NCBI GenBank assembly: GCA_025558095.1
Contig: JAIVFI010000006.1
Coordinates: 1-64,000, forward strand
Reading direction: 5' to 3'
From: Hyaloraphidium curvatum SAG 235-1
Taxonomy: Eukaryota > Fungi > Monoblepharomycota
Length of the DNA stretch: 64,000 nucleotides
Under the pieces are notes generated by a model that saw only the letters and a list, made by a program, of their open reading frames with translations, searched no databases and was not told the DNA's origin. Made by a program: the position numbers and the translations under genes. This document shows positions 6,830-51,538 of the stretch, piece after piece (the first letter of the stretch is position 1; each line of letters begins with the position of its first letter).

Positions 6830-7012
6830 AGTCCGCCACGTGTCTATCATGACCTGTAATGTATCGGTATATTCTGTGTCGCGGGCTCCTATATGCTAGG
6901 CGCCAGACGACGCGTTTCTTCTAGAAGGAGTCAAAGGAGCTATTTTTCGTTCAGAAGAAGGGTCGACGGAGAACGTTTTGCCCACAAAGTACACGGCAAA
7001 CGCTCTCGAGCT

Positions 7013-9452: not shown

Positions 9453-9507
9453 TGCCGTACAGCGGCGACCCGCGGCGCTCCACGCGGCCCCGCGCGGGAG
9501 GAGACCC

Positions 9508-9526
9508 GACTGACTGACTGACTGAC
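9508..9526 (-). promoter_or_regulatory. (TCAG)n tract upstream of copy A; homologous to putative tandem 3' splice acceptors of a 5'-UTR intron
   Basis: GACTGACTGACTGACTGAC on the + strand. The same element precedes copies B, C and D. In copy A the CTAAC branch-like motif is altered to CTCGC. Confidence 0.45.
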
Positions 9527-10014
9527 GAGCGGGGCGAGGGATTTCCCGTCGCCGCGAGCACCCGCAACTGCCCCCCGCGGCAGACACGCTCCCGACGCGC
9601 CTGCCGATGCCGACACGCGGAGGGACGTGCCCTCATGGCGGAGCTCCCCCGCGGGCCGCTCCCACCGCAGCAGAAGTGCGCGATGCTCACCGTGACGGTC
9701 GCCGTGCGGATGTACGACCTGCGCCCCGAGTCCTTCGTCGCGCTCGGCGAACGCGAGTTCCGCGCCCTGCGAACCTCGCTCGCCGCCTTCCGGGGACTCA
9801 CCTTCAGGTCGCCCCCCACCGCGACCCGCACGTGGCGCCCGTATCTCCTTCGCGGACCCACCGGTCGCGTCGGGCTCGTGGAGCTGCGTCAGGTGTGACT
9901 AAGCTGATGACCCGAACACCGGGTAGCGAGGCGCCGGCAAGCAAAAGTTGATACGTCGAGGCCGATATGAGGACGAGGACATGCAGATGGACGACGATGT
10001 TCGTTCCCCGGACT

Positions 10015-12190: not shown

Positions 12191-12394
12191 AGTCCGCCAC
12201 GTGTATCATGGCCTGTAATGTATCGGTAGCTGTGCCCCGAAACAGAGTCGCGGACCCCTCTATACCATGCGCCAGAGGACGCGTTTCTCCCCGAAGGGGC
12301 CAAAAGAGCTATTCTTTGCGAGTATAGGAAGAGTCGACGGAGAACGCCGCGAACCGGCTTCCCCAGAAGGTACACGGCAACCCGCTCTCGAGAT

Positions 12395-14884
12395 TCACAG
12401 CGCATCGAGTATCCGCTTCATCTCGTCCGCCACCTCCCCGAACCCCGGCCTCGCCGCCGCATCCATCGCCCAGCACCGCTGCATCAGCGCCCACGTGGCG
12501 TCCGGGATCCCCCGCGGCCGCTCGGGCCGGAAACCGGGGTCGCTCCGGATCCGCGGCTTGAACTCCTCGAAGTCGATGCCGTGCCCGGGGATGATCATGC
12601 CCTCGTCCAGGAGCTCCTGCATGAGCGGGGTCTTGCCCTCGGAGAGGAGTTCCCACATCGTCATGCCGAAGGCGTAGACGTCCGTCGCGGTGCCCGGTGT
12701 CGGCCTGGGCTTCCTGAAAGCTGCCGGACGTGGGTGAGCAAAAGGGAAACTGCCCGAAACACCGGGTACACTCACACTCGGGGGCCATGAACACCGGCGT
12801 CCCTCCACCCGAGATGGTCGAGCGAAGCGAGGCCGTGGTCCTGATCTTGGCCAGCCCGAAATCGGATATCTTCGCCACGCCGTTCTCGTCCACCAGCACG
12901 TTCTCGCCCTTGAGGTCGAGGTGCAGGATCGGCGTCGGCAGCGAGTGCAGGTGGTTCATCCCGAGCGCGACCTGGAACAGCAGGCGGTGCACCGCGCGGA
13001 TCTCCCACGGCGTTGGCTTGAGCTTTCGGAGGTAGTCCTTGGCGGTGCCCGCCATGAGCAGCGTGACGAGGCACAGGGGCTTGCGGCACCATCCCATGAG
13101 CGGTAGAACTGCGCGATCGTACCTCGTCAGCTGTTGAAACCCCACAGGCCCGCGCCGGAAGGGCTCACCGTTGACGTGCGGAGGCAGTCTCCCCCAGACT
13201 TCCATCTCCTTGTCAAACTCCGCGATCACACCTCCGCCTTCGAGGTCCGCCGCATCGATCCCGTTGATCATCTTGAGCGCCACCTTGGTGTGCTTCTGGT
13301 AGGTCCCTTCCATGACCATCCCAAAGCCGCCCCGACCGAGGAAGCCGCCCTGTTGCAGGTGCTTTGGGTCGATTTCGTAGCTGCTCGTCGCGCTGGGCCG
13401 CTCGACGGGAGGCGCGGGCACGGGTGAAGGCGTGGGCGCGGGGGGTTCGGGGTCGCGATCGAGGGGCGGGTTCGTGCTGGGCTCGAACGCGCTGTCCGCA
13501 AGCCCCGGATCCCCGCCCGCGGCAATCTGGGGCTGCACCTCCACCGGCCCGCCTTCCCGATCGTCGACGTGCAGTCCCAGTTCCGCCAGGGCCCGCGCGA
13601 CGGCAGCGATCTCCGCTTCCCTCGCCCGGGCGGCGGCGGCGATCTCCGCCTCCCTCTTGACGCGCTCCTCCTCAATGCGCCTCCGTTCTGCCTCCGCAAC
13701 CCTCGCGGCCTCCGCCTCGGCCTCCCGCACCGCACGGGCCACATCGACCCCCGTCTCCCCCGCCTTGTTCCTCCTCGTGACATCCACGCGGTCGGCCCGC
13801 CGCAGTAGCGCCGAGACCACCTCGGACCGCTTTGCCTGGCACGCGAGGATGAACCCCGTGTCGCCCTGCGCGTCGGCGGCGTCGGCGTCGACCCGCGGAT
13901 CCCCGAGAAGCAGCTCGACGCATGAGAGGTGGCCGCCTGCGCAGGCGAGCATGAAAGCAGTGCGGTCTTCGGGATCGCGGAGGTTGGGGTCCAGGGAGGG
14001 GTCCGCGAGGGCGGCCGCGAGCTTGGGCGGGTCGCCGTCGCGGCATTCGGAGAGGAGCGAGGTGCGAAGGGCCTTCAGACGCTGCTCCTTCGCCTCGCGG
14101 CGTTGCTGCTCCCGTTCGGCCTCCTGCCGGCAGGCTTCCTCCTCCCGCTGCACGCGGGCGCGCTCGGCTGCCTCGGCCTCCTGCCGCTTCTTCAGCTGCT
14201 CCCTGCGGCCGGCGGGATTCTTTGCGGCGGTCTCGATCTCCGAACGCAGATTCTCTAGAACGTTGTTTCTGCTAAGGTCGAGTTTTGATAGCGTGGAGTT
14301 GTGGGCGAGCGCCTCCGCAAGCGCGTGGGCGCCCTCGTCCCCGATGGAGTTGTTCTGCAGCCAAAGGGACGTCAGCGCCGAGTTGCCCTTCAGCGCCTCG
14401 GCGAGCGCGCGGGCGCCCCCGTCCCCGATGGAGTTGCTGGGCAGGTCCAGCCTTGTAAGCGCCGTGTTCGCCTTTAGTGCCTCCGCGATTGCGCGGGCGC
14501 CCTCGACCCCGATGGAGTTGTTGTCCAGCCAGAGGGTCGTCAGCACCGAGTTGCCCTTCAGCGCCTCGGCAAGCGCGCGGGCGGCCCCTTCCCCGATGGA
14601 GTTCCTGTGCAGGTACAGGGTCGTCACCGCCGAGTTGCCCTTCAGCGCCTCGGCGAGCGCGCGGGCGCCCCCTTCCCCGATGAAGTTGTTGTCCAGGCTC
14701 AGGGTCGTCAGCGCCGAGTTGCCCTTCAGCGCCTCGGCCAGTGCCCGCGCCCCGCTGTCCCCGAGTGACTGCCTGTCGGCATCGAGCCGCGTCTTCCCGC
14801 GAGCTCTTTGCGCCAGTACGCCGCATCGTGCTTCGTCGGCTCGGCAGGGGGCTTCGCGCGACCGATGCCAAGCAGCTTCTTCAT
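12395..14884 (-). CDS. LRR-ankyrin-coiled-coil-TKL kinase, copy B (1-nt frameshift at ~14797: pseudogene or sequence error)
   Basis: Same architecture as copy A, and the kinase region including introns is near-identical to A. The frame from ATG 14884 (MKKLLGIGRAK...ELAG) is broken by GGG where the paralogs have GGGG. Confidence 0.8.
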
Positions 14885-14940
14885 CGCTGCGCAGTGGCGG
14901 CCCGCGGCGCTCCGCACGGCTCCGCGGGGGAGCGGCACTC

Positions 14941-15011
14941 CTGACTGACTGACTGACGAGCGGGGTTAGGGATTTCACATCGCCGAGCCATCGAAAGCAC
15001 GCCGTCCCTAC
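14941..15011 (-). promoter_or_regulatory. Putative 5'-UTR intron of copy B with four tandem TCAG acceptors
   Basis: The minus strand reads AG|GTAGGG...CCCTAAC CCCGCTCG TCAG TCAG TCAG TCAG. The distance to the first AG is 59 nt, matching the typical intron size in this window. Confidence 0.55.
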
Positions 15012-15379
15012 CTCGCCCTCCCCCGACGCGTCCCGCCGGGGCAGATACCCTCCCGACGCGCTTGCCGTCGCCAACAGTGTGGACGGACGAGCCCTCGTGG
15101 CGGAGCTCACTCCCTCTCGAGCGTCTGCAACGCGCCCTGCGGGTGCCGCGTTCCCGCGCCGTGTCCCGCCTGATCGATGCGGGCCTCGCGCGGCGCGTAC
15201 GAGCTGCTCCTGCAGGTACTGATGAGGGACTTCGACCTCCGCGCGGGCGTCCGACACGACAAGACTTGGGAGCGCCCGGCGCCGGTTGCAGTTCGCGGGT
15301 GGTCCGGCGGGGGTCGGCAAGCTCTCCCCGGTGAAGAAGCTCCGCCTGTCGGGCTCCTTTCCCGTCGAGCGGGACCCCT

Positions 15380-16181
15380 GGCGATTCTCCCGCGGCGGAC
15401 ACGCTCTCCGACATCCGCAACCGCGCCGTCTCCCTCGTCCGTGACTACGGCATCGAGCACGCCATCCTCGGTCTGGAATGCCTGTCGCGCCTTCTCGGCG
15501 CGGAGGCCCGCCGCTTCCGCCCCGCGAGGGTGGTCGACCGCCCGCGGCACCACGACACCGCCATCCGGAAGCTCCTCTCGTCGGGGAGTTTCGGGTGCAC
15601 GGAGCCGTCGGCGATGTTCTCGGACTGCCTGGACTGCCGCCTCGGCCGCGGGACGCGCGCGGGGGATGGAGACGAGCTGGCTCCGCGGGGACGAGCTGCG
15701 CAGGATCGCCGGCTAGACGAGGGAGATCAACAGTGACCGTGCTGCGGGATGCGGAGGATTGGGGACGGGAGATGGGTTTCTCGAGGGTGTTTGTGGTCGA
15801 GGAGATCCGGAACGGATGTTGTCTGCAGCTGGGGTCGAGAAGCCACCGGCCCACGCGTCCGCCACGCCATCCGCCATCGGGTCGGGCCCCACCGTCCGAC
15901 CAGCGGTCCAGCGACCACCCCAAGAAGGACGGATTCGCGCGGTGCTCGAGGTGCAAGCGGGATCATTACTGCTCAAAGCAGTGCCAAGTGGCTGCGTGGC
16001 CGAAGCACAAGGTGGTTTCCCCGGCGATGGCGGCGCTGAACCCGGCGACGTAAATCGGTGCGGCACGAGGCGGCCATCTTTTGCGCGCCTTCTGACAGTG
16101 CTCCCGCGGCAGATCCCCCATCACACCGTGGAAAGGCCGGAGTACGCGTTGCGATGCCTGGAAAGGACGAGCGAAGGGTAG
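15380..16181 (+). pseudogene. Degenerate MYND-type zinc-finger gene, copy 1 (5' boundary uncertain)
   Basis: FARCSRCKRDHYCSKQCQVAAWPKHKVVS is the MYND C-terminal half with the last Cys replaced by Ser. Upstream frames are fragmented. Confidence 0.55.
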
Positions 16182-17494: not shown

Positions 17495-19485
17495 CTACCA
17501 CGCCTCCATTTCCGCGCAGACCTCGACGAACGTCGGCCTGTCCGCCGGGTTCTGCGCCCACATGCGCTCCATGAGGTTCCACATCCTGTCGTCGACGTCG
17601 TCGGGGCGCTCGGGCCGATCTCCTTGCTTGACAGCCTCCCGAAGCTGTCCAATTCCGTGAAGACCCAGTCGGACCAAGGCGGGTGCGAGCCACCCACCAA
17701 CAGCGCACCCAGCCCTTGAAACGGGTAGCCGCCCTCGTCGACGACCTCGTAGCACACCATGGCGAACGCGTACACGTCCACGGGCGGGCGGAGCTTGCCG
17801 CCGCGCCAGAGTTCCGGGGCCATGAACGGCGGGGTGCCGCTTGCGGAGCCCCCGGCATCGCGATCGCCGCTGGTGGTGCCCAGGGAGAGGTGCGTGCGGA
17901 CCTTGGCGAGGCCGAAGTCGGCGATCTTGGGGATGTCGTGGTCTGCAGTGGCCGGGGGTTAGATGCGCATGCACCCCCGGCCCGAGGGCCGCGCGAGCCC
18001 ACCGATCATGATGTTGGCGCACTTGAGGTCCCCGTGGAGCACCTTGTACGAGTGCAGGTACGCCATTCCCGCGGCCGTCCCACGGAGGTACCTGAGCCCG
18101 ACTGTCTGGTCCCAGCGCAGTTGTTCGAGCCGCGCACGCATGCTGCCGTCGGTCAGCTCCGAGATCAGAAGGGGCGGAGACTCGCAAAAGGCGAGGAGGG
18201 GGAGCACTGCGGCAAACGTTGAGCCGGGACGGCGAAAGTGCGAGATGAGAGGCCCACCATTCCGCTGGTTCAGCCCATCCCACACCGCAATCTCCTTCAG
18301 GAACATCTGGACCGTCTCGGGGGTCACGTCGCCCTTGACGGTCTTGACGGCCACACGCGTCGCGCCCCTGAGCACGCCACGGTAGACCGTGCCGAAGGAG
18401 CCCTGGCCGAGGATGGACGCTTTCTCGGTGGAGTAGGCGACCTCGTCCTTGGCGATGCGGAGCTTGGAGAGGAACGCCGAATGGTCCGATTTGGTGCTTC
18501 CGGGGGAGGCATGCGATCGGGACGGATCCGAAGGGAGCTTTGTCACCTGTGACGAGCTCCAGGAAGAAGCCGCCGGCGCGGCCGGGGCGCGCTTGGCCAT
18601 CTCCGCCGCTTCGGCCAGCCTGGGCTCCACCTCTTCCTCCCTCAGCCTCAGCTCCTGCAGACGACGTGCGACCTCGGCTTCCTGCTCCCGCACGCGGGCG
18701 GCCTCGTCCGTGAGCCGCTGCTGCCTTTTGACCTCCTGCTGCTGTCGCTGACGGAGGGCTTCTTCCTCGAGGCGATTGCGTTCCCGCAAGGCAGTCTGCC
18801 GCCGCCGCTCTTCCTCCTGCTGCTGCCGCGCGCGGGCGCGCTCGGCTGCCTCGGCGTCCTGCCGCTTCCGCATCTGCTGCCTGCGCCCGGCGGGATTCCT
18901 CGCGGCCGTCTCAATTTCCGAAAGCAGATTCTCGGGAAGGCCGTTCTCCCTGATGTCGAGGTCCGAGAGCGTCAAGTTGTGAACGAGCGCCTCCGCGAGC
19001 GCGCGGGCTCCCTCGACCCCGATTGAGTTGTGGTACAGGCCCAGGGTCGTGAGAGTTGTGTTTCCCCTCAGCGCCTCGGCAAGCACGCGGGCGCCCTCGA
19101 CCCCGACGGAGTTGTGATGTAGGTACAGGGTCGACAGAGCCGAATTCCCCTTCAGCGCCTCGGCGAGCACGCGGGCGCCCTCAACCCCGATGGAGTTGCT
19201 GCCCAGATTAAGGGTCGACAGAGCCGAATTCCCCTTCAGCACGTCGGCGAGCGCGCGGGCCCCCCCGTCCCCGATGGAGTTGCTGGCCAGGAACAGGGTC
19301 CTCAGCGCCGAGTTCCCCTTCAGCGCCTCTGCAAGCGCGCGGGCCCCGCTGTCCCCGAGTGATTGCTCGATAACAATGAGCTCCGTCTTCCCCGCGAGCT
19401 CTTTCCGCCAGTACGCCGCATCGTCCTTCGTCGGCTGGCGCGCACTCTCCTCCGTCGCGCGGCCGATGCCCAGAGGCTTCTTCAT
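17495..19485 (-). CDS. LRR-coiled-coil-TKL kinase, copy C (no ankyrin; 4 internal LRRs; 3 kinase introns)
   Basis: Starts MKKPLGIGR, followed by 28-aa LRRs and a Q/E/R coiled coil. Kinase motifs are GQGSFG, VAVK, HGDLKCAN, DFG, APE and DVYAF, ending AEMEAW*. Confidence 0.9.
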
Positions 19486-20286
19486 CGTGGCACGCCGGGG
19501 GGCCCGCGGCGCTCCGCAACGGCCCGCGGGGGAGTGGCACTGTCCTGACTGACTGGCGAGCGGGGTTAGGGATTTCCCCATCGCCGAGCCCTCAAAGCAC
19601 GCCGACCTCCCCGCTCCGCCGACGCGTCCCGCGGCAGACACCTTCCCGACGCACCTGCCGATGCCGACAGTGTGGGTGGACGGGCCCTCGCGGCGGACGT
19701 CCCCCTCGAGGTCGCGGCGCGGCCTCCGCGCTCCGGCCGACCGCCCGGCCCGCGCCGCCCTGTCCCGCCTAATGCGGGCCTCCCGCGGTGCCTACGCATG
19801 GCCGCTGCCCGCATTAATGCCGGAACTCGACCCCGCACGGCCATCGGGGACGAGGAAGCCCGGGAGCGCCCGGCGCGCGTGGCAGTTCGGGGCCGGCCCG
19901 GCGGGTGGCTTCAAGTTCTCGCCGGTGAAGAAGCTGCCTGTCTGGCGCCCTTCCCGTCGAAGGGGAATCCCACCTACTGCGCGAATCTCGAGCACCTCGA
20001 CTGCGTGGAGCTGCCACTTCGGCGTGCTGCTGGCCACCATCGAGCCCGCCGCGCGGAACCTGCGCTTCCGGGCCTTCCGCGACGCCGGCAACGACTTCAC
20101 CGCTGCCGATAAGGACGCAGCGGACCGCCGGTACGGTGCCCTCGACGTGGGCGGGCCCGCGCCCGGGAGCTGCAGCGCGCGGAAATCCGGACCGTCGGCC
20201 ACGCGAGATCGATCCACCTGCTCAACTTCATCTCGGACGGCGCCCAGCAGCCATGGGCTTCCTTTGAGACGGCCGCGACCCCGTTG

Positions 20287-39629: not shown

Positions 39630-42600
39630 ATGGACGCTAGCGGCGCCGACGATGAGGCAGCAGCGAAGCACAATATTCCCTTGGAGAGCGTCGTGCCCGT
39701 CGAAGGCGATGCGACGGCGGCCGGCCGGCCGAACGGCGATGGCGTTGCGGAATCCCCGTCCCCGACGAGGGAGGGAGGACTGCGGCGCCGCGTCGTGGAC
39801 AGCCTGAAAGACAGCTATGCGGAGGCGCGAACGATGCAGTTTGACCATACGCTGGTCGAATCGTTGGACCTGGAGGGTGGGACCGGCGCCCGACGCTATC
39901 TGGCCCTGCGTCTGACCTATGGCTCCGTTGGGCAGAACCGGACCTTTACTACCGATATGCTGTCGCCAAGCGCGGTGGACGATCGCCTGTGCCTTCTCCT
40001 GCGTCGGATACGGTGCCGCCCACGGCACCGCACACGGCGGCTGGGGGTCGTGGGAACGGCAACGGGTCCATCCCCCTTCCGACCTCTCCAAAGGAGGACG
40101 AACCCGAGGTCCCTTATCCGTTGATGAGGAATGGCTCCTTTGCGGCGAAGGGAACCCACAACACCCTTTCCTCGACCGTAACTGTTCGCCCGGAGCGCAG
40201 CACCCGCGACAGACTTGCCGAGGGCCTTTTGCGTTTCCTCGACGACTTTGCACGCTACTTTCTTATTCTCTTTCTGGCCACGCTCGTCGCCTGCATGTAC
40301 AAGTTCATCTTCTTCAGCTCCGAAGAGGGCTTGGAGTGGCGGATTCATCTGATGGAAGGCTATCTCGGCATTGGACACGGCGGTGGCGGCGAGAAGCACC
40401 GCCGCGCTCCCGGGTCGGAAAGCACCCCCGACTCGGGACAGCTGCACGATCCGAACTACGCCGCCGCGTACTTCGTCTCCGTCGGCACCTCCCTGCTCTT
40501 TGCTCTCCCTCCCGCCCTCTTGATCGTGCTCTTCAAACCGGCCGCCGCGGGAGCCGGGATGCCCGAGGTCATCGCCCTGCTGAACGGCGACCTGCAAACC
40601 CGGGCCTTCGAATTCGCGGCGCTGGTTCTCAAAATCTGCGGATCCATAGGGATCGTGGCCAGTGGCTTGTTCTCCGGCTTCGACGGACCCATGATTCAGA
40701 TCGGCGCCGTCATGGCTTACCTCATGATCAGCGTGCTCTGGGGCCCGACGGAGGTCGCTCGCCACGTGGGCTTGCGAAACATGGGCCTGGGCACGGCCGT
40801 CTCGGAAATGCCGAAGGTCAAGACCTCTTCGGGTTCCAACATGGTGACCTTGCACAACACCTTCCGACGGCGCGCCATCGCCCACGAGGTGGACGAGGTC
40901 CGGCACTCGGAGAAGCAGAAACGTACGCTGGACTTTGCGACCCTGGGGGCGTGCGCCGCCATCGGCTCTGCTTTCCGCTCGCCTCTTGCCGCGGTCACTT
41001 TTGCGCTCGAGGAGGCCATCACCCATTACGATCCTTCTTTCATTTCCCGGGCGATGCTCGTGGGAATCTGGGCCTTCCTCATGCTTAGTTTCCTCAACAA
41101 AATCGACTGGTTCAACCCGTACAGCTTCTCCATCTTCTCCATTAACGGGCATTGCACCATACGTACCGAGTACTTGGACTTGCTTCTGTGGACTGCTATG
41201 GGTTTCGTGGCCGGCGTTGCTGGTAAGCATTGCGAGTTCCCGCGTCTTGCGCCAGCTCAATCCCGCTGTCAGGGCACCTTTACAATCTCGCAATCACGAA
41301 GATTCGGACCCTGCGGACGCGTCTCACGTGGCCGGCCAAACCCGGTCGTGCCATCGTGGACCTCGTCGTCGTGGTCCTCATCTCCATGGCCGTCGTCGTC
41401 TTCCTGCCCCTGGCCTTCGACACCTGCACGCCTTTGCGGCAGTCGCTGGACCACGTATCGGACCTGAGGAATGCCTGCGACATCATTTGCAACACGACGG
41501 CAGAACCGCCGGTGACGTACCTCAACTTCGAGTGCCACCTCTTCCTCGACGAGAGCATCGCAGGGGACAAGATCTGCCTTCCCGACGATGTCCAGACCAA
41601 CGTCTTTGCGGTGAGCAGATCGGCGCCGGTGTTACACTTTTCGCCTATTCTGATTGCGCGTGACAGACGATTGTGATGATGCTCGACAACGTCAGCACCA
41701 ATGCCTGCGCGACCCTGCCCAAAAACGCAACGTACCGGTTCGACCCTTTCAGCGCGACTTCACGCCAAGAACTTGCGGCCGGTACACGTCTACCCTACAT
41801 CAAGAAGGGCACGGTTGTGGACCCTGCGACTGGTCAGACCGTGGAGTGTGTCTGGCAGATGAGGTGGGGGGCCTTCGGAACCGAGCCCGTGCACGATCCA
41901 TCTAACGACCATTCAGGTCCCTGCTTTGGGACATTCCAGAACGGGTCCTACAGAATCTGTACCTTCGTGGCCTGTACTACCTTTTCGACTGGCAGGTCCT
42001 CCTCACCTTCTCCTTCGTCTACCTGGCCCTCTCGATGATGGTCAACGGAATCTGCCTGCCAACCGACATGGTCATTCCGAATCTTGTCATTGGTGCGAGT
42101 TTCGGCAGATTGTGCGCTTTGGGCGTCAACGTCCTGAAGGCCAACTCCGGTGCGACGCTCGTGGATCCGGGACTATATGCAGTTTTGGGCATGGCGGCCT
42201 TTTGGTCTGGGACATCGCGGATGAGCATAACCATTGCCCTGATCGGTGAGCGGAGCCGCACGGTGGCTGGTCTTTTTGCGCTGACAGCACGTCGCAGCTA
42301 TCGAAACGACCTTCGAGCTCACCTACCTTCCCGCGATCCTGGTCGTCGTGACAGTGGCCACGATCGTGGGCAACTCCCTCGGCCCGTCGCTCTACCACAT
42401 GGAGATCCACAACCGGCAGATACCCTACCTCGACATCGAGCCGCCGCAGCAGTCCAAGGACGTGCTGGCGAGGAAACCCGTCTCGGAGATGATGTCGCGG
42501 CCCGTGCACGTCGTTGTCGGGTTGCGGCCGACCCAGGGCGAGATCAGGCGCGTTCTGGAAGAGCCGAACAGTTTCGCCGGATATCCTGTCGTCGACCAGG

Positions 42601-44385: not shown

Positions 44386-45020
44386 TTTCGCGGAGAGGTG
44401 GTGGGAGTGGAAAAGGCGGAGAGCTGGGCTGCCTGGCGGCGAATCGGGCGGGCGAGGCCGGTGAGAAGCCTGTAGATAGCTGCGGTCGGCACCGGCGCGG
44501 ACCTCGTGGAACGTGCCGCGCGTCAATAGCGCCGGCAGCGAAGGCCGAAAGAGCGAAGAGGTGCAGGAATCCGCGGTGCGAGGCCGCACGGGAGAGGGTG
44601 CGAGGAGAGGCGGCGGACGGCGCGCGCGGGGCGTCGAGCGCGGAGTCGGAAGTGACGGGCGCGGCAGGTCCCGAGCGAGACCGTAGCCGTGGTTCGGAGG
44701 GCTGCTGCCTGTGGTCAGCGCGCCGACCGAACGCGGTGCGGTTGTGGGCGTCGACGCGATCGATCGATGACCCATCCTGCTCCCAGCTCGCCAAGACAAC
44801 ACCGCCGCTCAAAATCCAACACCCAGGACGCAGAAAAGGGGAAGTGGGGCGATCGCATTCGAAGCAATCATACAGCAACATTCATGCTTGGAACTCGACG
44901 ATCTGGCTCGCCTCCCCCGTCTGAATCGAGGACATTCGGGCGGTCTGATCGCGATCCGCCCGGCACGGCCAAGCCTCGACAAACATCTATCTCGGCTCGC
45001 CGGTGCGCGACCTCGGCGCC

Positions 45021-46762
45021 ATGCGGTGGCTCTCTGCCGCGCTCTTTTGTTCTTCCGCATGTCTTTTTGCGGTGGCCGACGCTGCCCAGCGCCGCCCACC
45101 GCGGCAGGCCCCGGCGCAAGTGCCGCCCGGCTATTCCCTGGACAATGCCACTGCGGGTCTGCTGGACCTGGTCGCAGGCCCGGGCTACGATGCATCGACA
45201 CGGCCGCTGTTTGGCCGCGCCGAGACGGTCGTGGAGGTGCAGCTGCGCGTGAACCAGCTTTACGCGCTCGAGCCCGACTCGTCGACGTTCACGATGGACG
45301 TGCGGCTCCGTCTGTATTGGAACGACCCGCGCCTCGTCGCTCCGCCGGACTGGCCGTCGTCCAACGGCTCGCACTATCGGCTGCTGGGCATGGTGGAGCT
45401 AGGTAACGGACACGACGAGCCGTACCGAATATGGACCCCCGACATCGCCTTCTTCAACCAGGTGGAGTCGACGCTGCTCGACAGCGTCGTCAAGCTGGAT
45501 CCGCTGACGGGCAACGTCTTTTGGAGCCGCCATTTCGTGTGCAAGCTCTCCAACTCCTTCTTCTTCGCGGCGTTTCCGTTTGACAAGCAGAACCTGACGA
45601 TGCGGATCACCTCCTTCAGCTACAACAAGGAGCAGATGACCCTTTCCTTCCGTTCGCCACCGGTTTACCCTGAAATCGACCCCGCGACCTACTCGCAGGG
45701 CACATGGGACTTTGACTCGTACTCGATCGGAAACTACCTGTACCTGCAGACCGATGACGGGGTGCTCTTCGAGATGCTGACGTTCAGCATGCTCGTCTCG
45801 CGCAAATCGGGGAGCTACTACATTAAGACGGTGCTACCGCTGTTGCTCCTCGTGGCATTGACTTGCGTTTCCTACTGGCTGTCGGCCGACGCGATCCCGG
45901 AGCGCTTGGGTCTGACAATCACCCTGGTCCTGACCATCGTGTCGTTCTACAACTCGACCAGCTTTATGCTGCCGCCCGTCAACTACGCGGTAACGCTGGA
46001 CTGGTGTAGGTGCCTTTCGTGGTTCGATCGATCCTTGCCTGACTTCCCATTGCCTTTGCAGACGTGTTCGTGGCGTTCCTCGTCTCCTTCTTTGCCCTCG
46101 TCGAGGTTGCCATGGTGCATCACCTCGTCCGGCGCCAGCGGAACCACATCGTTGCCTCGGAGCTGGATTTCTTTTGCCGCCGCTTTGTGCTTCCCTTCTG
46201 GGCCTTGTTCAACGTCGGGATCCTCGTCCAGCTGCCACCCGGCTCGTTCCCGTACGTCTGGCTCATCTGCGGGATCCTCATATTCCTGCTCCTCTTTGCC
46301 AACGCCTGGCTCTTTGCCTACTATATCTACAAGCGCTACGACCTCCGGATGAAGCTGGAGGCGACCGCGTACGGGAAGGAGAAGCTGGAGGACTATGGCG
46401 AGTACGTCGCGGGCAACGTGGACATCGGCCGCCCGGGCACGCTCCGGCGGCGGGCACACGACATTATCATCAGCTCGACAGAGGGCGTGTTCGACCTGCT
46501 GCACATCCCGCGGCCCGGGGGGAAGCAGCTCCGGCGGCTCGCCACGGATGCGGACGGAGTAGGGCCGGACGCGAAAGGGACAGAGCGGGAGAAGATTGAC
46601 CGGCTGAGCATCGATGAGGACCTGGAAAAGGCACGGAGGGCGAGGCGGGCATCGGCTTTGGGCGACGGTGGGGAGCGCGGGGACGGGAACGGGTCCGTTT
46701 CCTCGAGGGGGAAGAAGAGCGTGGCGGACGACTCGGACGTGGCGGACGGCGAGATAGTGTAG
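45021..46762 (+). CDS. Cys-less pentameric ligand-gated ion channel (Pro-loop receptor) subunit 1, with extra C-terminal TM helix and tail (intron 46006-46061)
   Basis: Signal peptide, then YDASTRP, YWNDPRL, IWTPDI, FPFDKQ and pre-M1 R (SRKSGSYY). TM segments are M1 with Pro (VLPLLLLV), M2 PERLGLTITLVLT, M2-M3 LPPVNY, M3 TLDWY...LVE and M4 RFVLPFWALFN. Confidence 0.92.
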
Positions 46763-46974
46763 GACTTGAGCCTGTTGCTCTCTGGATGCTATTGCTTCGG
46801 ACATCACTGGCCGTGAGCGATGTTCCCCGTCCGTCGATCAGCTCCACCCGTCTATGTCAAGCCACATGACGGAGAGCAGGATTAGCAGAGCACAACGGAT
46901 TGCGTTCTGAGCCCGATCCCAAGCCCCGCCAAATATCCCGCCATATCTCCTTCTCGATCGGCGCCCTGGGGGCC

Positions 46975-48693
46975 ATGCGTTGGCTCTCTGCCGCACTCCT
47001 ATGCTCCTCCGCATGCCTTCTTGCGGTCAGTGGTGCGGCCGCGTCGCGCCGCCCGCCTCGGCAGGCCCCGGCACCGGTGCCTCCCAGCTACTCCCCGGAC
47101 AATGCCACGGCGGCCGTGTTTGACCTCGTTGCCGGCCCGGACTACGATGCGTCGACGCGGCCGCTCTTTGGCCGGGCGCCGACCGCCGTGCAGGCCCAGC
47201 TGCGCGTGAACCAACTCTACGCGCTCGATCCCGACTCGTCGACCTTCACGATGGACGTGCGGCTCCGTCTCTATTGGAACGACCCGCGCCTCGTCATCCC
47301 GTCGGACTTTCCCTCGGCCAATGGCTCCCATTATCGCCTCCTCGGCATGGTGGAGCTCGGCAATGGCCAGGAGGAGCCGTACCGAATATGGACGCCCGAC
47401 ATATCTTTCTTCAACCACGTCGAGTCCACCCTTCTCGATAGCGTCGTGAAGCTGGATCCTCTTACGGGCAACGTCTTTTGGAGCCGCCACTTCGTGTCCA
47501 AGCTTTCCAACGCATTCTTTTTCGCGGCGTTCCCCTTTGACAAACAGAACCTCACAATGAGGATCACGCCCTTCAGCTACAACAAAGAGCAGATGACCCT
47601 TTCCTTCCGTTCGCCACCGGTTTACCCTGAAATCGACCCCGCGACCTACTCTCAGGGCACATGGGATTTTGACTCGTACTCGATCGGAAAGTACTTCTAC
47701 CCGCAGACGGACGACGGGGTGCTCTTCGAGATGCTGACGTTCAGCATGCTCGTCTCGCGCAAGTCGGGGAGCTATTACATCAAAACGTTCCTGCCTTTGA
47801 TGCTCCTCGTGGCGCTGACCTGCGTCTCGTACTGGCTGTCAGCGGACGCGATCCCGGAACGGCTGGGTCTGACCATCACCTTGGTCCTCACCATCGTGTC
47901 GTTCTACAACTCGACCAGCTTTATGCTGCCGCCCGTCAACTATGCCGTCACTCTCGACTGGTGTGGGTACCTTATCGCTTTTGCTCCGAGTCGGACCGAG
48001 TCGGACCTAACTTGCCAATCTGCAGATGTGTTCGTGGCCTTTCTCGTCTCCTTCTTCTCGCTCGTTGAAGTGGCAATGGTGCACCACCTCGTCCGGCGCC
48101 AGCGGAACCACATCGTCGCTTCGGAGCTGGACTTTTTCTGCCGTCGCTTTGTTCTACCCTTTTGGGCCTTGTTCAACGTCGGGATCCTCGTGCAGCTCCC
48201 TCCTGGCTCCTTCCCCTACGTCTGGCTCGTGTGCGGCATCGTTATGTTCCTGCTTCTCTTCGCCAACGCCTGGCTGGTCGCGTACTACGTCTATAAGCGC
48301 TACGACCTCCGTGTCAAGCTGGAGGCCACCGCGTACGGCAAGGAGAAGCTGGAGGATTACGGGGAGTTTGTCGCCGGTAACGTGGACATCGGCCGCCCGG
48401 GCACGCTCAAGCGGAGCGCGCATGACTTTGTGATCCGATCAACCGAGAGCGTTTTCGACCTTCTGCATATCCCGCGGCCGGGAGGGAAGCAGTTGCGGCG
48501 ACTCGCAACGGATGCGGACGGAGGAGGGACAGAACGAGAAAAGATGGACCGGCTGAGTATAGACGAGGACCTGGAAAAGGCGCGAAGGGCGAAGAGCTCG
48601 TCTGCCTTGCCGGACACCGGTGGGTCTGTGGGATCGAGGGTCAAGAAGAGCATGGCGGATGACGCGGACTTTATGGAGCGAGACGTGGTGTAG
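46975..48693 (+). CDS. Cys-less pentameric ligand-gated ion channel subunit 2, tandem paralog (intron 47963-48025)
   Basis: Same motifs and same intron position as 45021-46762, with many synonymous differences. Confidence 0.92.
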   Translation: MRWLSAALLCSSACLLAVSGAAASRRPPRQAPAPVPPSYSPDNATAAVFDLVAGPDYDASTRPLFGRAPTAVQAQLRVNQLYALDPDSSTFTMDVRLRLYWNDPRLVIPSDFPSANGSHYRLLGMVELGNGQEEPYRIWTPDISFFNHVESTLLDSVVKLDPLTGNVFWSRHFVSKLSNAFFFAAFPFDKQNLTMRITPFSYNKEQMTLSFRSPPVYPEIDPATYSQGTWDFDSYSIGKYFYPQTDDGVLFEMLTFSMLVSRKSGSYYIKTFLPLMLLVALTCVSYWLSADAIPERLGLTITLVLTIVSFYNSTSFMLPPVNYAVTLDWCGYLIAFAPSRTESDLTCQSADVFVAFLVSFFSLVEVAMVHHLVRRQRNHIVASELDFFCRRFVLPFWALFNVGILVQLPPGSFPYVWLVCGIVMFLLLFANAWLVAYYVYKRYDLRVKLEATAYGKEKLEDYGEFVAGNVDIGRPGTLKRSAHDFVIRSTESVFDLLHIPRPGGKQLRRLATDADGGGTEREKMDRLSIDEDLEKARRAKSSSALPDTGGSVGSRVKKSMADDADFMERDVV

Positions 48694-49127
48694 CTTTTGT
48701 TTGTTGGTAGTGATTTACTGCGTTGATCGGATGAAGAGTCATGCAGTGCGCCAACCGGTCTGCGCGGGCTGAAACAGTCCGCCCCAACAGCAGACGGTGC
48801 CACGCCGTTACGCCGGCGTCGACTAGGGAGAGATCCGCAAACTCCCAGGAGCAGGGGAACGTACCGGCGCGCCTCGGCAGCCCGACCTCGGCGGCGGCGA
48901 CCCCGTAGACCAAGACCCCAGACCCGGACCACGCGAGAAGGTACTAACCTGTTGAGCGTTGCCGTTGTTCATGGTTGGCGCGGAGAGTCACGATGACGTT
49001 TTCGGGATCCCGACCCTTGGCTCCTGGTCTCCTGACTCACTCCCAAACGGAACTGATTCAACGGCTCCCTCTCTCCTGGTTACTATTCACAGTCACAAAG
49101 CATTCCTTTCAACGGCATTCTTCCGCT

Positions 49128-51538
49128 ATGCGCCCTGCGATGGGTGCTCCGCTGCCGGTACGGCGAATGCGCCGGGCGCACCCCGACGCGCTCCTGCTCC
49201 TCCTCCTTCTTGCGTCGGCCGTGGTCGCCCCGGCACCGGCGGTGGCCAGCGTGGTCAGCCAAATGACATACTACCCCCATGGTGCTTCTTGCACCGGCGT
49301 GCCGGTCGGCCAGGATCTCGTCGTGGCAGACTCTTGCCCTGCCGCCCGGTGCACCGCCGGGCTCGCCAACTCTCTGCCCAACTGGGACGCTTCGCGCTCG
49401 TGCTGGGCAGACGCCAGCGGGTTCAATCTTGGAAACACAAATGTGGGCCCTTGCGCAGCTTCTACAAGCTTATACTCCTGAGGTGTTCCCCTCAAAAGGC
49501 CACATTCTTGGCTTCCTCATTTTGGACCGGAACCACGAAATGCGACACGTCTGCCATGGTCTATGCCGGTACCGCCACGCTCGCCAACTCGTGCCTGCCT
49601 TCCGGCTCCAACAACGGCTCCATGATCGTCCGTTGCTACGCCAACTACGCCGTCTTTAACTACTTCTCTGATGCTCAATGCACCGTGACGTCTTCACAAA
49701 CGCCACAAGAGATGCCTCTGGCAACCTGTGGGACCTTCTTTGCAACTGCGCGTGAGTAGGCGCCGATGGGCGGTGCATCCAGCACCGAACCTCATCCGTC
49801 CTTACCGGTCTTGACTTCCTCCAGTCAATAGGACCTTGACGCAGTACAGGCTCTGTCTCCGGAACGAGCCCGGCGAGACGATGATCTTCCCCGCAGTGGC
49901 TTCGCCCTCGCCCCCGCCCCCGCCGCCTCCGCCCGAGGGGCCTCCTGTCGGTGCCATCGTCGGGGGCGTCGTGGGCGGACTAGCGGCAATCGGCTTGCTT
50001 GCCGGCTTCCTCATCTGGCGCCGGAAGCATAGCCGGACAGTGGAGGCGAAAGACCCTTCCTACCATTCATCTTCGCCCCAAGTCTCCTCATTGAAGGCCA
50101 CCCCCTTGGACTCTCACAAAAACACCTTCGTGCCCGTTGCCGTGCAGGAAGCTTATCTTCCAACCCCTACTCCGGCCGTGATCGAGATCGCGGGGCCCGG
50201 GAAGCCATCCGTCCCTTGGAATGAAGCTGCCATGGAACTCGCTGGGGCTCCCGTCAGGCAAAAAGCGCAGGTGCCCTACCTGGAGGTTGCAATGCACGCA
50301 GTGACCCCTGCAGCAGCATCTGCGACCTCATTGGAGACGACCCTGGCAGCGGATCACAGCGACGGGGCTGCACATCACGACGTCAGGCCGCCTGTGCCCC
50401 TGCCGGCTCCACCATCTGAAGATATCACGGACGCATCGGCCGCATCGGCCTCACCAAACGTTCTAGCCGGCTCAGCTGCTTCGGCGGCATCGGCACCCGC
50501 CGTCGTTGTTGCTTCCGCCTCTGCCGAAAAAGCCCCACATGCCCACCCCATCCGCTCCTCTACCGATCCCGCTTCTTCTGGCTCTCCCCCTCAACCTCCG
50601 CACGTCTCCAAGCTCCTCGTGGCCGCATCGGAGATCACTATTCTCCGCGACAAGAAGATCGGCGAGGGCAGCTTCGGCGTGGTCCACCAGGGCCTGCTGC
50701 ATGGCAACATCCCCGTGGCCGTCAAGTCCCTCAAGGGAGACGCGGACAGCAAAGTGCTAAAGGCTTTCTTCCGGGAGGTCGGGACGTGGGAAGGGTTGGT
50801 GCAAAGAAACGGTACGGGATTACGGTGCGGAGAAGCCCGAGTTCCTGCTCACGAACTGTCGGACCGCCAGTCCTGCCCCTCATGGCCTACTGCGCCGACC
50901 CGCCCATGATGGTCACGGACTACTGTCCGGACGGCAACCTGCGCAAGTTCCTTGACTCCCGCTCCTGGCCGCAGGACCTCGGCCTGCGCCTCCTCCTCGA
51001 CGTCGCGAGGGGGATGGTCTACCTCCACGGCCTCGGCATCCTCCACGGCGATCTCAAGTCGCTCAACGTGCTGGTCGACTCGGGAAAGGCTCTAATCGCG
51101 GACTTTGGCCTCTCCAAGGTCCGCTCCGAGGTCGGCCGATCCACCGCCGGCACCGTCGGCGGCCCGGTCTCGGGGACGCCCGGGTTCCTCGCGCCAGAGC
51201 TGGTGGGCGGCTCGGCGCTGCATAAGCCCGCGGACGTGTACGCTTTCGGGATGGTGTGCTACGAGGTCGCCAGCAAGGGACGCTTTCCGTTCGAGGAGCT
51301 GATGAACCCGGCTTTGGTGGGCGCCTCCATCGTGGTTGCCAGTGCGCACCTGATCGATTCCGTTCCGTGCGCGCAGGTCCTCTACAACGTCGCCGTGAAG
51401 GGTGTCCGTCCCGAGAGGCCCGACGGGGTACCGGATGCACTTTGGCACCTCATGGAGCGGTGCTGGGACCAGGACCCGAAGAAGAGGCCAGCCTTCGGCG
51501 AGGTCGCGGACGAATTAGCCAAGATCGTGGGTTCCTAA
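49128..51538 (+). CDS. Single-pass receptor-like TKL kinase RLK2, paralog of 1076-3376
   Basis: Signal-like ALLLLLLLASAVVAPAPAVA, then SVVSQMTYYP...Cys-rich ectodomain, poly-Pro, TM GAIVGGVVGGLAAIGLLAGFLIW followed by RRK. Kinase motifs are GEGSFG, HGDLKSLN, DFG and APE. Intron positions match RLK1. An alternative ATG is at 49140. Confidence 0.9.

What the first reader, a model, noticed from the sequence alone, without database searches (positions are those of the whole stretch)
45021..48693. Tandem Cys-less pentameric ligand-gated ion channels in an apparently fungal genome
Seen: two intact, intron-bearing pLGIC genes. The Cys-loop position reads SN(S/A)FFFAAFPFDKQNL, keeping the invariant Pro but lacking both cysteines, and the M3-M4 loop is short (~15-20 aa) as in prokaryotic ELIC/GLIC. 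Known: pLGICs are well known from animals, some prokaryotes and scattered protists, and are generally regarded as absent from fungi. Inference: retained ancestral or horizontally acquired neurotransmitter-receptor-like chemosensors in an early-diverging fungus.
Basis: partly seen in the sequence, partly recalled or inferred. Interest (0 to 1): 0.85.

Follow-up and report, generated by a model that had tools for sequence, protein, structure and literature searches.

The report
Neurotransmitter-receptor-type ion channels in a fungus
An early-branching freshwater fungus carries and transcribes a small family of genes for the channel type that animal nerve cells use as GABA, glycine and nicotinic receptors, a family that reviews still describe as absent from fungi.

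Summary
Window 45021-46762 and 46975-48693 (+) hold two intact paralogous pLGIC genes of 561 and 551 aa. Each has one short GT..AG intron, and public RNA-derived contigs skip both introns exactly.

- **Fold.** Pfam finds both pLGIC domains. The AlphaFold model matches GABA-A and glycine receptor structures (TM 0.89).
- **Cys-loop.** Both cysteines are missing (Asn178 and Leu192 in gene 1). The invariant FPFD proline is kept.
- **Host.** The host is the fungus Hyaloraphidium curvatum (Monoblepharomycota). GenBank already holds both proteins under automatic names.
- **Family.** The pair belongs to nine paralogues on five contigs, plus one divergent copy.
- **Relatives.** The nearest named relatives come from at least ten chytrid fungi. 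A choanoflagellate protein sits in the sister clade.
- **Origin.** Inheritance within opisthokonts is favoured and not rejected (AU p 0.37 and 0.13). Transfer between eukaryotes is not excluded.

Two features go beyond the finding. A fifth membrane helix after M4 carries a conserved, roughly 130-residue tail back into the cytoplasm. The pore motif reads PER where chytrid and animal anion channels read PAR, which predicts cation permeability.

I found no paper describing fungal pLGICs. Ligand, selectivity and assembly are untested. This scan's first readers had separately noted the fifth helix and PER on this same stretch.

The parts
44980..46803 (+). Approximate transcript of gene 1
   Evidence: RNA-derived contigs of run X1 start at 44980, next to a sequencing adapter, and end at 46803. 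Depth is zero at 44800-44936.
45021..46005 (+). Gene 1 exon 1: signal peptide, extracellular ligand-binding domain, M1, M2 and the start of M3 (residues 1-328 plus the first base of codon 329)
   Evidence: ORF and sequence. PF02931 at 1.6e-24 and PF02932 at 2e-10. Translation equals P0001 residues 1-328.
45552..45596 (+). Gene 1 'Pro-loop' (Asn178-Leu192), the stretch equivalent to the Cys-loop but without cysteines. FPFD is kept.
   Evidence: Column-by-column comparison with a glycine-receptor alpha-1-like sequence. F185, P186, F187, D188 and Q190 are invariant or nearly so among relatives.
45894..45962 (+). Gene 1 pore helix M2 (residues 292-314), with the selectivity motif Pro293-Glu294-Arg295 at 45897-45905
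   Evidence: AlphaFold helix 292-314. The HMMER alignment to glycine receptor shows PER opposite PAR, with 2' Gly, 6' Thr and 9' Leu kept and 19' Arg replaced by Ser.
46006..46061 (+). Gene 1 intron (56 nt, GT..AG, phase 1, inside codon Tyr329 at the start of M3)
   Evidence: A contig of run X1 skips 46006-46061 exactly. The split codon reads TAC.
46062..46762 (+). Gene 1 exon 2: rest of M3 (to 46132), M4 (46145-46225), extra helix M5 (about 46247-46327), cytoplasmic tail (46328-46759) and stop codon
   Evidence: Equals P0001 residues 330-561. AlphaFold helices at 325-352, 357-383 and 391-429, then a helical tail. Two hydrophobic segments follow M3. The tail is conserved in paralogues.
46932..48741 (+). 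Approximate transcript of gene 2
   Evidence: Contigs of run X1 carry adapter sequence at 46932 (start) and 48741 (end).
46975..47962 (+). Gene 2 exon 1 (residues 1-329 plus one base). Pro-loop at 47509-47553 and PER at 47854-47862.
   Evidence: PF02931 at 1.3e-22 and PF02932 at 5.9e-10. Translation equals P0002 residues 1-329. Sequence read directly.
47963..48025 (+). Gene 2 intron (63 nt, GT..AG, same position and phase as in gene 1; stays in frame without a stop)
   Evidence: A contig of run X1 skips 47963-48025 exactly. The split codon reads TAT.
48026..48693 (+). Gene 2 exon 2: M3, M4, M5, cytoplasmic tail and stop codon
   Evidence: Equals P0002 residues 331-551. It is 86% identical to gene 1 exon 2, with dN/dS 0.11.

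Best explanation
These are two functional, transcribed subunit genes of a pentameric ligand-gated ion channel (Pro-loop receptor, Cys-less type) in the fungus Hyaloraphidium curvatum. They arose by an old tandem duplication inside a family of nine or ten genes. The family most likely descends from the opisthokont ancestor. The predicted protein has a secreted N-terminal beta-sandwich that binds a small ligand at subunit interfaces. M1-M4 then form the usual pore module, with M2 lining the pore (9' Leu gate, 6' Thr, 2' Gly). A very short M3-M4 link follows, then a fifth membrane helix that returns the chain to the cytoplasm, and a conserved helical tail of about 130 residues. That tail probably does the job of the animal M3-M4 intracellular domain, such as regulation, anchoring or trafficking. 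The pore mouth reads Pro-Glu-Arg where animal anion channels and the chytrid relatives read Pro-Ala-Arg, so the channel is predicted to pass cations. The ligand is unknown. The kept loop-D arginine and the glycine-receptor-like loop B suggest an amino-acid-like compound. The two copies differ in loops A, B and C but have identical M2 helices, so they probably differ in ligand or in their place in a hetero-pentamer. Shown here: gene structure, transcription, splicing, fold, family membership, host and relatives. Inferred: pentamer formation, gating by a ligand, cation selectivity, M5 topology, tail function and vertical descent.
For: - **Domains and fold.** Both Pfam pLGIC domains score above cut-off. 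The AlphaFold model has mean pLDDT 81.6 and above 90 across the extracellular domain and M1-M4. The best Foldseek matches are GABA-A and glycine receptors, with E 4e-26 and TM 0.89 by target length. The best PDB sequence match is glycine receptor alpha-Z1 at 2.6e-27, and ICD-deleted constructs align through residues 379-380, which identifies helix 357-383 as M4.
- **Expression.** Both introns are spliced out exactly in run X1, and the two genes give separate transcript ends.
- **Selection.** dN/dS is 0.09 for exon 1 and 0.11 for exon 2, at dS 0.6-0.8.
- **Host.** NCBI names the identical proteins as Hyaloraphidium curvatum, on a 909,727-bp contig. Taxonomy places it in Fungi.
- **Family.** Nine loci on contigs C1, C6, C37 and C39, plus a divergent one on C4.
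- **Relatives.** Named relatives come from Blyttiomyces, four Boothiomyces or Terramyces strains, two Globomyces, Podochytrium, Zopfochytrium and Obelidium. The choanoflagellate Mylnosiga sits in the sister clade.
- **Descent.** AU tests do not reject a single opisthokont clade (p 0.373) or a single fungal clade (p 0.132).
- **M5 and topology.** The whole 48-sequence Cys-less clade typically has two hydrophobic segments after M3, while other Cys-less groups have one and Cys-loop groups have at most one at the C-terminus. Basic residues sit on the M3-M4 link and after M5, and none on the M4-M5 link.
- **Tail.** It has 18 invariant positions across ten family members.
- **Pore.** PER is seen in eight of nine paralogues, and PAR in most chytrid and choanoflagellate-clade relatives. 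The single change A-1'E made glycine receptor cation-selective, with PCl/PNa 0.34 (PMC2233820).
Against: - No current, ligand or pentamer has been observed.
- Cation selectivity is extrapolated from one mutant animal receptor.
- M5 has lower model confidence than M1-M4 (pLDDT 74-82), and a monomer model cannot show where it packs.
- The tail folded alone gives a poor model (pLDDT 59.8) and matches no Pfam family or Atlas cluster.
- In the reduced tree the Hyaloraphidium clade groups with a clade holding a chrysophyte rather than with the chytrids (SH-aLRT 91). That clade sits on a very long stem (1.71).
- Only about 30 of the 7,044 homologues were named, so the taxon labels of the clades rest on few sequences.
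- Run X1 is recorded only as 'RNA?'. Its RNA nature is inferred from the spliced contigs.
Confidence: 0.8

Rival explanations
1. The Hyaloraphidium family was acquired by gene transfer from another eukaryote, for example a stramenopile alga sharing its freshwater plankton habitat. It then expanded, independently of the chytrid pLGICs.
For: In the reduced tree the Hyaloraphidium clade is sister to a clade containing the chrysophyte Epipyxis and an MMETSP transcript (SH-aLRT 91; names). Forcing all fungal sequences into one clade costs 13.6 log-likelihood units. Identity to chytrid proteins is only 27-35%.
Against: The AU tests do not reject opisthokont monophyly (p 0.373) or fungal monophyly (p 0.132). 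The partner clade has a very long stem (1.71), so long-branch attraction is likely. In the larger tree the three clades form an unresolved trichotomy. The pore and M2-M3 region of Hyaloraphidium resemble the chytrid and choanoflagellate type (P-x-R, LPxVNY), whereas the other clade lacks the proline stretch. The genes have host-like GC content and several spliceosomal introns.
Confidence: 0.17
2. The proteins have the pLGIC fold but are not gated by an organic ligand. They could respond to pH or ions as GLIC and DeCLIC do, or they could signal mainly through the conserved cytoplasmic tail.
For: The tandem pair has lost the loop-A aromatic residue that nearly all relatives keep (Ala or Ser where others have Tyr). 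Loop C is short and variable. The conserved tail is unusual for the family. Prokaryotic relatives gated by protons or calcium depletion are known (abstracts listed).
Against: The loop-D arginine, the loop-B S-F-S-Y motif and the loop-E GNVFWS motif match glycine-receptor binding-site positions. The pore keeps the 9' Leu gate and polar 2' and 6' rings. Strong purifying selection acts on the extracellular domain.
Confidence: 0.15
3. The genes do not belong to the fungus. The contig is a contaminant or a chimera, or the genes came recently from bacteria.
For: None found.
Against: Paralogues lie on five large contigs of the same assembly. GC content is uniform at 61-73% across the window. Spliceosomal introns are removed in RNA-derived contigs. 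The neighbours are eukaryotic LRR-ankyrin-kinase and CLC genes. The nearest named relatives are eukaryotic, and at least ten other chytrid assemblies hold homologues.
Confidence: 0.02

Closest known systems
Cys-less eukaryotic 'Pro-loop receptors' of unicellular opisthokonts and other protists (Jaiteh et al. 2016, PMC4795631)
   Same: Both lack the Cys-loop cysteines, keep the Pro-loop proline and have a short M3-M4 link. One named choanoflagellate protein (Mylnosiga) falls in the sister clade of the chytrid proteins.
   Different: That survey found none in Fungi. Here the host is a fungus with nine or ten copies. [quoted passage not shown] The pore motif is PER.
Animal anion-selective Cys-loop receptors (glycine, GABA-A, GluCl)
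   Same: They are the best sequence and structure matches among solved structures. They share the loop-D Arg, the loop-B SF(G/S)Y motif, the loop-E GNV motif, 2' Gly, 6' Thr, 9' Leu and the M2-M3 LPxV(S/N)Y...D(I/W)(W/Y) motif.
   Different: The fungal proteins have no Cys-loop disulfide, no long M3-M4 intracellular domain, Glu instead of Ala at -1', Ser instead of Arg at 19', and an added M5 and tail.
Chytrid pLGIC homologues in GenBank (Blyttiomyces, Boothiomyces, Terramyces, Globomyces, Podochytrium, Zopfochytrium, Obelidium)
   Same: They are fungal, Cys-less and share the FPFD Pro-loop and short M3-M4 link. Most have two hydrophobic segments after M3.
   Different: Identity is only 27-35%. 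Most carry PAR (anion type) rather than PER, keep the loop-A Tyr, have short tails without the conserved domain, and form a separate clade.
Prokaryotic pLGICs GLIC and ELIC
   Same: They also lack Cys-loop cysteines and have a short M3-M4 link.
   Different: They are not the nearest relatives by sequence or fold search. The best matches are animal anion channels and eukaryotic Cys-less proteins. The pore-mouth motif and the M2-M3 motif are of the eukaryotic anion-channel type. GLIC and ELIC sequences were not placed in my tree.

Membership tests
Pentameric ligand-gated ion channel superfamily (Pro-loop receptors) | Extracellular beta-sandwich ligand-binding domain (Pfam PF02931) | tested here: met
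   87 and 80.8 bits against a cut-off of 26. The AlphaFold model shows beta strands with pLDDT above 90.
Pentameric ligand-gated ion channel superfamily (Pro-loop receptors) | Four-helix membrane module M1-M4, with M2 lining the pore | tested here: met
   PF02932 at 41.8 bits against a cut-off of 28.1. Helices at 264-286, 292-314, 325-352 and 357-383. TM-score 0.89 to GABA-A chains. The M1 Pro273, 0' Arg295 and 9' Leu are kept.
Pentameric ligand-gated ion channel superfamily (Pro-loop receptors) | Conserved proline in the beta6-beta7 loop (FPxD) | tested here: met
   F185-P186-F187-D188 are invariant or nearly so in the alignments.
Pentameric ligand-gated ion channel superfamily (Pro-loop receptors) | Assembly as a pentamer and opening on ligand binding | not testable with these tools
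   This needs expression, electrophysiology or a solved structure.
Cys-loop receptors in the strict sense | Two cysteines 13 residues apart that close the beta6-beta7 loop | tested here: not met
   Asn178 and Leu192 stand at the two positions in gene 1, and Asn179 and Leu193 in gene 2. No C-x13-C was found in any Hyaloraphidium or chytrid member.
Anion-selective class (glycine, GABA-A, GluCl type) | Pro-Ala-Arg at -2' to 0' of the pore mouth | tested here: not met
   The motif is Pro-Glu-Arg in eight of nine Hyaloraphidium paralogues and Thr-Asp-Arg in the ninth. Most chytrid relatives do have PAR.
Animal-type pLGICs | Long M3-M4 intracellular domain, with M4 at the extreme C-terminus | tested here: not met
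   The predicted M3 and M4 helices are 4 residues apart, and about 180 residues follow M4.

The most novel reading that the evidence does not exclude
A eukaryote-wide clade of Cys-less pLGICs, including those of fungi, has a five-helix rather than four-helix membrane domain, and M5 puts the C-terminus in the cytoplasm. In the Hyaloraphidium lineage this end gained a conserved regulatory domain of about 130 residues, a different solution from the animal M3-M4 intracellular domain. The pore also switched naturally from the anion type (PAR) to the cation type (PER). Fungi would then have kept, diversified and rewired a 'neurotransmitter receptor' family for environmental sensing.
Probability: 0.45. 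Interest if true: 0.72.

Novelty: new variant of a known kind. Interest (0 to 1): 0.62.

Why it matters
Reviews of this receptor family state that it is missing from fungi. That statement shapes ideas about how often the family was lost and where synaptic receptors came from. This locus, its paralogues and the chytrid homologues show that early-branching fungi kept the family, and that one non-swimming planktonic fungus expanded and transcribes it. This moves the loss within Fungi to after the chytrid-grade lineages branched off, and it strengthens the case that the opisthokont ancestor had Cys-less pLGICs. The fungal proteins are also compact natural variants. They have no disulfide and no long loop, they carry an extra helix with a C-terminal cytoplasmic domain, and they have a natural A-1'E pore. 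That makes them attractive for structural work and for testing selectivity and gating rules. Other follow-ups in this scan report expanded insect-type chemoreceptor channels and DEG/ENaC channels in the same genome. I did not test those reports, but together they would point to an unusually rich ionotropic sensing repertoire in this fungus.

Tried and rejected
- **Word-indexed protein searches.** The searches with alignments scored only 8,000 candidates each and returned few hits. They gave species names but no census of fungi. Whether Blastocladiomycota, Mucoromycota, Zoopagomycota or Dikarya have pLGICs is not answered.
- **AU test on the full tree.** The test on the 116-row tree did not finish in two runs. 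I repeated it on a 53-row subset.
- **Tail domain.** There was no Pfam match and no Atlas match. The tail-only AlphaFold model was too poor (pLDDT 59.8) for a fold search, so I ran none.
- **Literature.** The searches 'pentameric ligand-gated' + chytrid, 'Cys-loop' + early-diverging fungi, and pLGIC + 'fifth transmembrane' returned no papers. The searches pLGIC + fungi, PF02931, and 'ligand-gated ion channel' + chytrid returned papers, but none reports a fungal pLGIC. The library lacks most subscription journals, so absence there is not proof.
- **Bacterial origin and contamination.** Both were considered and rejected (see rival explanations).
- **Helix 357-383 as an amphipathic loop helix.** I rejected the idea that M5 is the true M4, because solved ICD-deleted receptors align through residues 379-380.
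- **Exon joining.** The joined step was left out, and the spliced proteins used in searches are the database records P0001 and P0002, which I checked exon by exon.
Full report
**What is there**

The region holds two same-strand open reading frames whose translations are 88-90% identical.

- Gene 1 starts at ATG 45021. A 56-nt intron (46006-46061, GTAGGT..CAG) splits the Tyr329 codon. The gene ends at TAG 46760-46762 and encodes 561 aa.
- Gene 2 starts at 46975. It has a 63-nt intron at the same position and phase (47963-48025). This intron happens to stay in frame, which is why the ORF list shows one long frame. The gene ends at 48693 and encodes 551 aa.

The word-indexed protein search with exon 1 returned two database proteins, P0001 and P0002. 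A script confirmed exon by exon that they begin and end with the window's exon translations, that the single middle residue is the split codon, and that the lengths add up.

**Transcription and splicing**

The one public run that holds the stretch (X1, 87% of sampled words) is stored as contigs. Laid on 44800-48900, its contigs skip exactly 46006-46061 and 47963-48025, both GT..AG. They carry sequencing adapters at 44980, 46932 and 48741, and depth is zero upstream of 44937. The run is therefore RNA-derived. Both genes are transcribed as separate messages, and both introns are removed as modelled. Contigs cannot rank expression levels.

**Family and fold**

- Pfam finds the neurotransmitter-gated channel ligand-binding domain (87 and 81 bits, cut-off 26) and the membrane region (42 and 40 bits, cut-off 28) in both genes.
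- An AlphaFold model built on a 130-sequence alignment has mean pLDDT 81.6, with most 10-residue blocks above 90 through the beta-sandwich and M1-M4.
- The best Foldseek matches in the PDB are GABA-A and glycine receptor chains (E about 4e-26, TM 0.81-0.89 by target length).
- The best sequence match among solved structures is zebrafish glycine receptor alpha-Z1 (2.6e-27).
- Aligned to a glycine-receptor alpha-1-like protein, the Cys-loop cysteines correspond to Asn178 and Leu192, while F185-P186-F187-D188 are kept. The cysteine at residue 174 of gene 1 is not at a Cys-loop position and is a serine in gene 2.

**Host**

NCBI names P0001 and P0002, which are 100% identical to the window, as proteins of Hyaloraphidium curvatum on a 909,727-bp contig. 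The taxonomy copy places this species in Fungi, chytridiomyceta, Monoblepharomycota. Earlier follow-ups of this scan named the same organism, and I confirmed that independently through the NCBI records.

Several results make contamination or a chimera very unlikely:

- GC content is uniformly high across the window.
- The neighbours are eukaryotic LRR-ankyrin-kinase and CLC genes.
- The introns are spliceosomal and are removed in RNA.
- Paralogues are spread over five contigs.

**The wider family in this genome**

Six-frame searches of the whole assembly found nine loci:

- the tandem pair studied here;
- three head-to-head pairs, at C6:861.1-864.4 kb, C1:279.2-283.3 kb and C37:165.3-169.0 kb;
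- a single gene at C39:458.8-460.6 kb.

A tenth locus is a divergent, intronless ORF of 375 aa on C4. It passes the PF02932 cut-off and has an FPFD loop.

Many paralogues have an additional intron inside M2 that the tandem pair lacks, and they share the intron after the D-W motif at the start of M3.

Between gene 1 and gene 2, dN/dS is 0.09 (exon 1) and 0.11 (exon 2) at dS 0.6-0.8. The duplication is therefore old and both copies are under purifying selection. Their M2 helices and M2-M3 links are identical. The differences cluster in the signal peptide, the N-terminal part, and loops A, B and C of the binding site.

**Relatives elsewhere**

An exhaustive HMMER scan of 1.84 billion representative proteins gave 7,044 hits. 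Hyaloraphidium-type proteins score 44-57% identity, and then there is a drop to 37% or less.

Cluster look-ups and a profile search named the nearest non-Hyaloraphidium proteins as chytrid fungi:

- Blyttiomyces sp. JEL0837
- Boothiomyces sp. JEL0838, Boothiomyces sp. JEL0866 and B. macroporosus
- Terramyces sp. JEL0728
- Globomyces pollinis-pini and Globomyces sp. JEL0801
- Podochytrium sp. JEL0797
- Zopfochytrium polystomum
- Obelidium mucronatum

Several carry automatic names such as 'Glycine receptor subunit alpha-3'.

A tree of 117 sequences over the extracellular domain to M3 recovers a Cys-less group of 48 (SH-aLRT 91). It is made of three clades:

- the Hyaloraphidium clade (99);
- a clade joining the chytrid proteins with a clade that contains the choanoflagellate Mylnosiga (97);
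- a clade containing the chrysophyte Epipyxis and an MMETSP transcript (99).

Animal anion-type Cys-loop receptors lie on the other side of the tree.

The three-way relation is unresolved. On a 53-row subset, Hyaloraphidium joins the chrysophyte-containing clade (91), which has a very long stem. AU tests do not reject one opisthokont clade (p 0.373) or one fungal clade (p 0.132).

Two unnamed public samples (SRR26194948 and SRR23967301) hold 52-56% identical full-length relatives with the same tail. One of them groups with a specific Hyaloraphidium paralogue, so the family diversified before those organisms split.

I read this as retention from the opisthokont ancestor (about 0.65) over eukaryote-to-eukaryote transfer (about 0.17). 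Bacterial origin is excluded for practical purposes.

**Features beyond the finding**

*Extra helix.* After M4 (helix 357-383) the model predicts a further long helix at 391-429 whose first 25 or so residues are hydrophobic.

- The identity of M4 is fixed by sequence alignment to M4 of solved receptors that lack the intracellular loop.
- Basic residues lie on the M3-M4 link and just after M5, and none on the M4-M5 link, as the positive-inside rule expects.
- A simple hydropathy scan finds two hydrophobic segments after M3 in most of the 48-member Cys-less clade. The other Cys-less groups have one, and the animal Cys-loop proteins have at most a single C-terminal M4.
- This scan is crude and some members score only one segment.

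*Conserved tail.* In the Hyaloraphidium-type family the 130 residues after M5 are conserved, with 18 invariant positions across ten members. The identity to paralogues (55-62%) is as high as in the extracellular domain. The tail matches no Pfam family or Atlas cluster and folds poorly alone.

*Pore mouth.* It reads Pro-Glu-Arg in eight of nine paralogues, whereas most chytrid and choanoflagellate-clade relatives and animal anion channels read Pro-Ala-Arg. In human glycine receptor the single A-1'E change was sufficient to make the channel prefer cations (PCl/PNa 0.34), and removing the 19' arginine raised calcium permeability (PMC2233820). The fungal proteins have Ser at 19'. Cation, and perhaps calcium, permeability is therefore predicted but not shown.

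**Binding site**

- The loop-D arginine that pairs with the ligand carboxylate in glycine receptor is kept in genes 1 and 2 and in most chytrid proteins.
- Loop B reads S-F-S-Y, against S-F-G-Y in glycine receptor.
- Loop E keeps G-N-V-F-W-S.
- The loop-A tyrosine, present in nearly all relatives, is Ala in gene 1 and Ser in gene 2.
- Loop C is short and variable.

This fits a small amino-acid-like ligand with specificities that differ between paralogues. That is an inference from alignment only.

**Comparison with what is known**

The closest described group is the Cys-less 'Pro-loop receptors' of unicellular eukaryotes. The paper that defined them reports none in Fungi, and a 2021 review repeats this. 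Ten full-text searches found no paper describing a fungal pLGIC or a fifth helix in the family. The library lacks most subscription journals.

The sequences themselves have been public in GenBank under automatic names. The novelty lies in recognising and analysing them, not in the data.

**Verdict**

This is a genuine, expressed fungal branch of a well-known channel superfamily, with an unusual membrane topology, an added cytoplasmic domain and a cation-type pore motif. It corrects a textbook-level statement about taxonomic distribution. It does not reveal a new kind of system.

I score interest at 0.62 and class it as a new variant of a known kind.

Noticed in passing
G000:C4:69946-71073 (-), which is L025:2447-3574: A tenth, divergent pLGIC-like gene: an intronless ORF of 375 aa with an FPFDRQ Pro-loop and no obvious signal peptide. 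PF02932 scores 30.2 bits (cut-off 28.1). Identity to gene 1 is only 27%.
   Followed up: partly
G000:C6:861103-864387; C1:279176-283254; C37:165319-169010: Six of the other paralogues lie in three head-to-head pairs. The '+' partners of the C6 and C37 pairs group together in a family tree (92/83). This hints at an ancestral two-gene unit with a shared promoter, perhaps two subunit types of a hetero-pentamer.
   Followed up: partly
Database proteins P0003 (C37), P0004 (C1) and P0014 (C6:863 kb): The GenBank models of three paralogues look truncated or mis-spliced. They run into the intron inside M2 or the intron after the D-W motif, and end in low-complexity read-through. The genome encodes M3-M5 and the tail downstream for at least the C37 (P0003) and C1 (P0004) loci.
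   Followed up: partly
L023:1-1708 (sample SRR23967301): In an unnamed relative, the orthologous-type pLGIC gene sits next to a gene with an ionotropic glutamate receptor channel domain (PF00060).
   Followed up: no
window 6951-9587 (-), 12309-15956 (-), 17959-19641 (-): A cluster of large genes combining leucine-rich repeats, ankyrin repeats (in two of the three) and a protein kinase domain.
   Followed up: no
window 39989-41467 (+): An ORF with a voltage-gated chloride channel (CLC) domain (PF00654, 5.3e-24), about 3.5 kb upstream of the pLGIC pair.
   Followed up: no
window 49836-50909 (+): An ORF with a proline-rich N-terminus, one hydrophobic segment, a long Ser/Ala/Pro-rich linker and the start of a protein kinase domain. 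It is probably a receptor-like kinase that continues past an intron, directly downstream of gene 2.
   Followed up: no
Database proteins P0019 and P0175 (Boothiomyces): Two chytrid pLGIC models carry an extra N-terminal region with a precomputed PF07986 hit. This may be a fused gene model rather than a real domain fusion.
   Followed up: no
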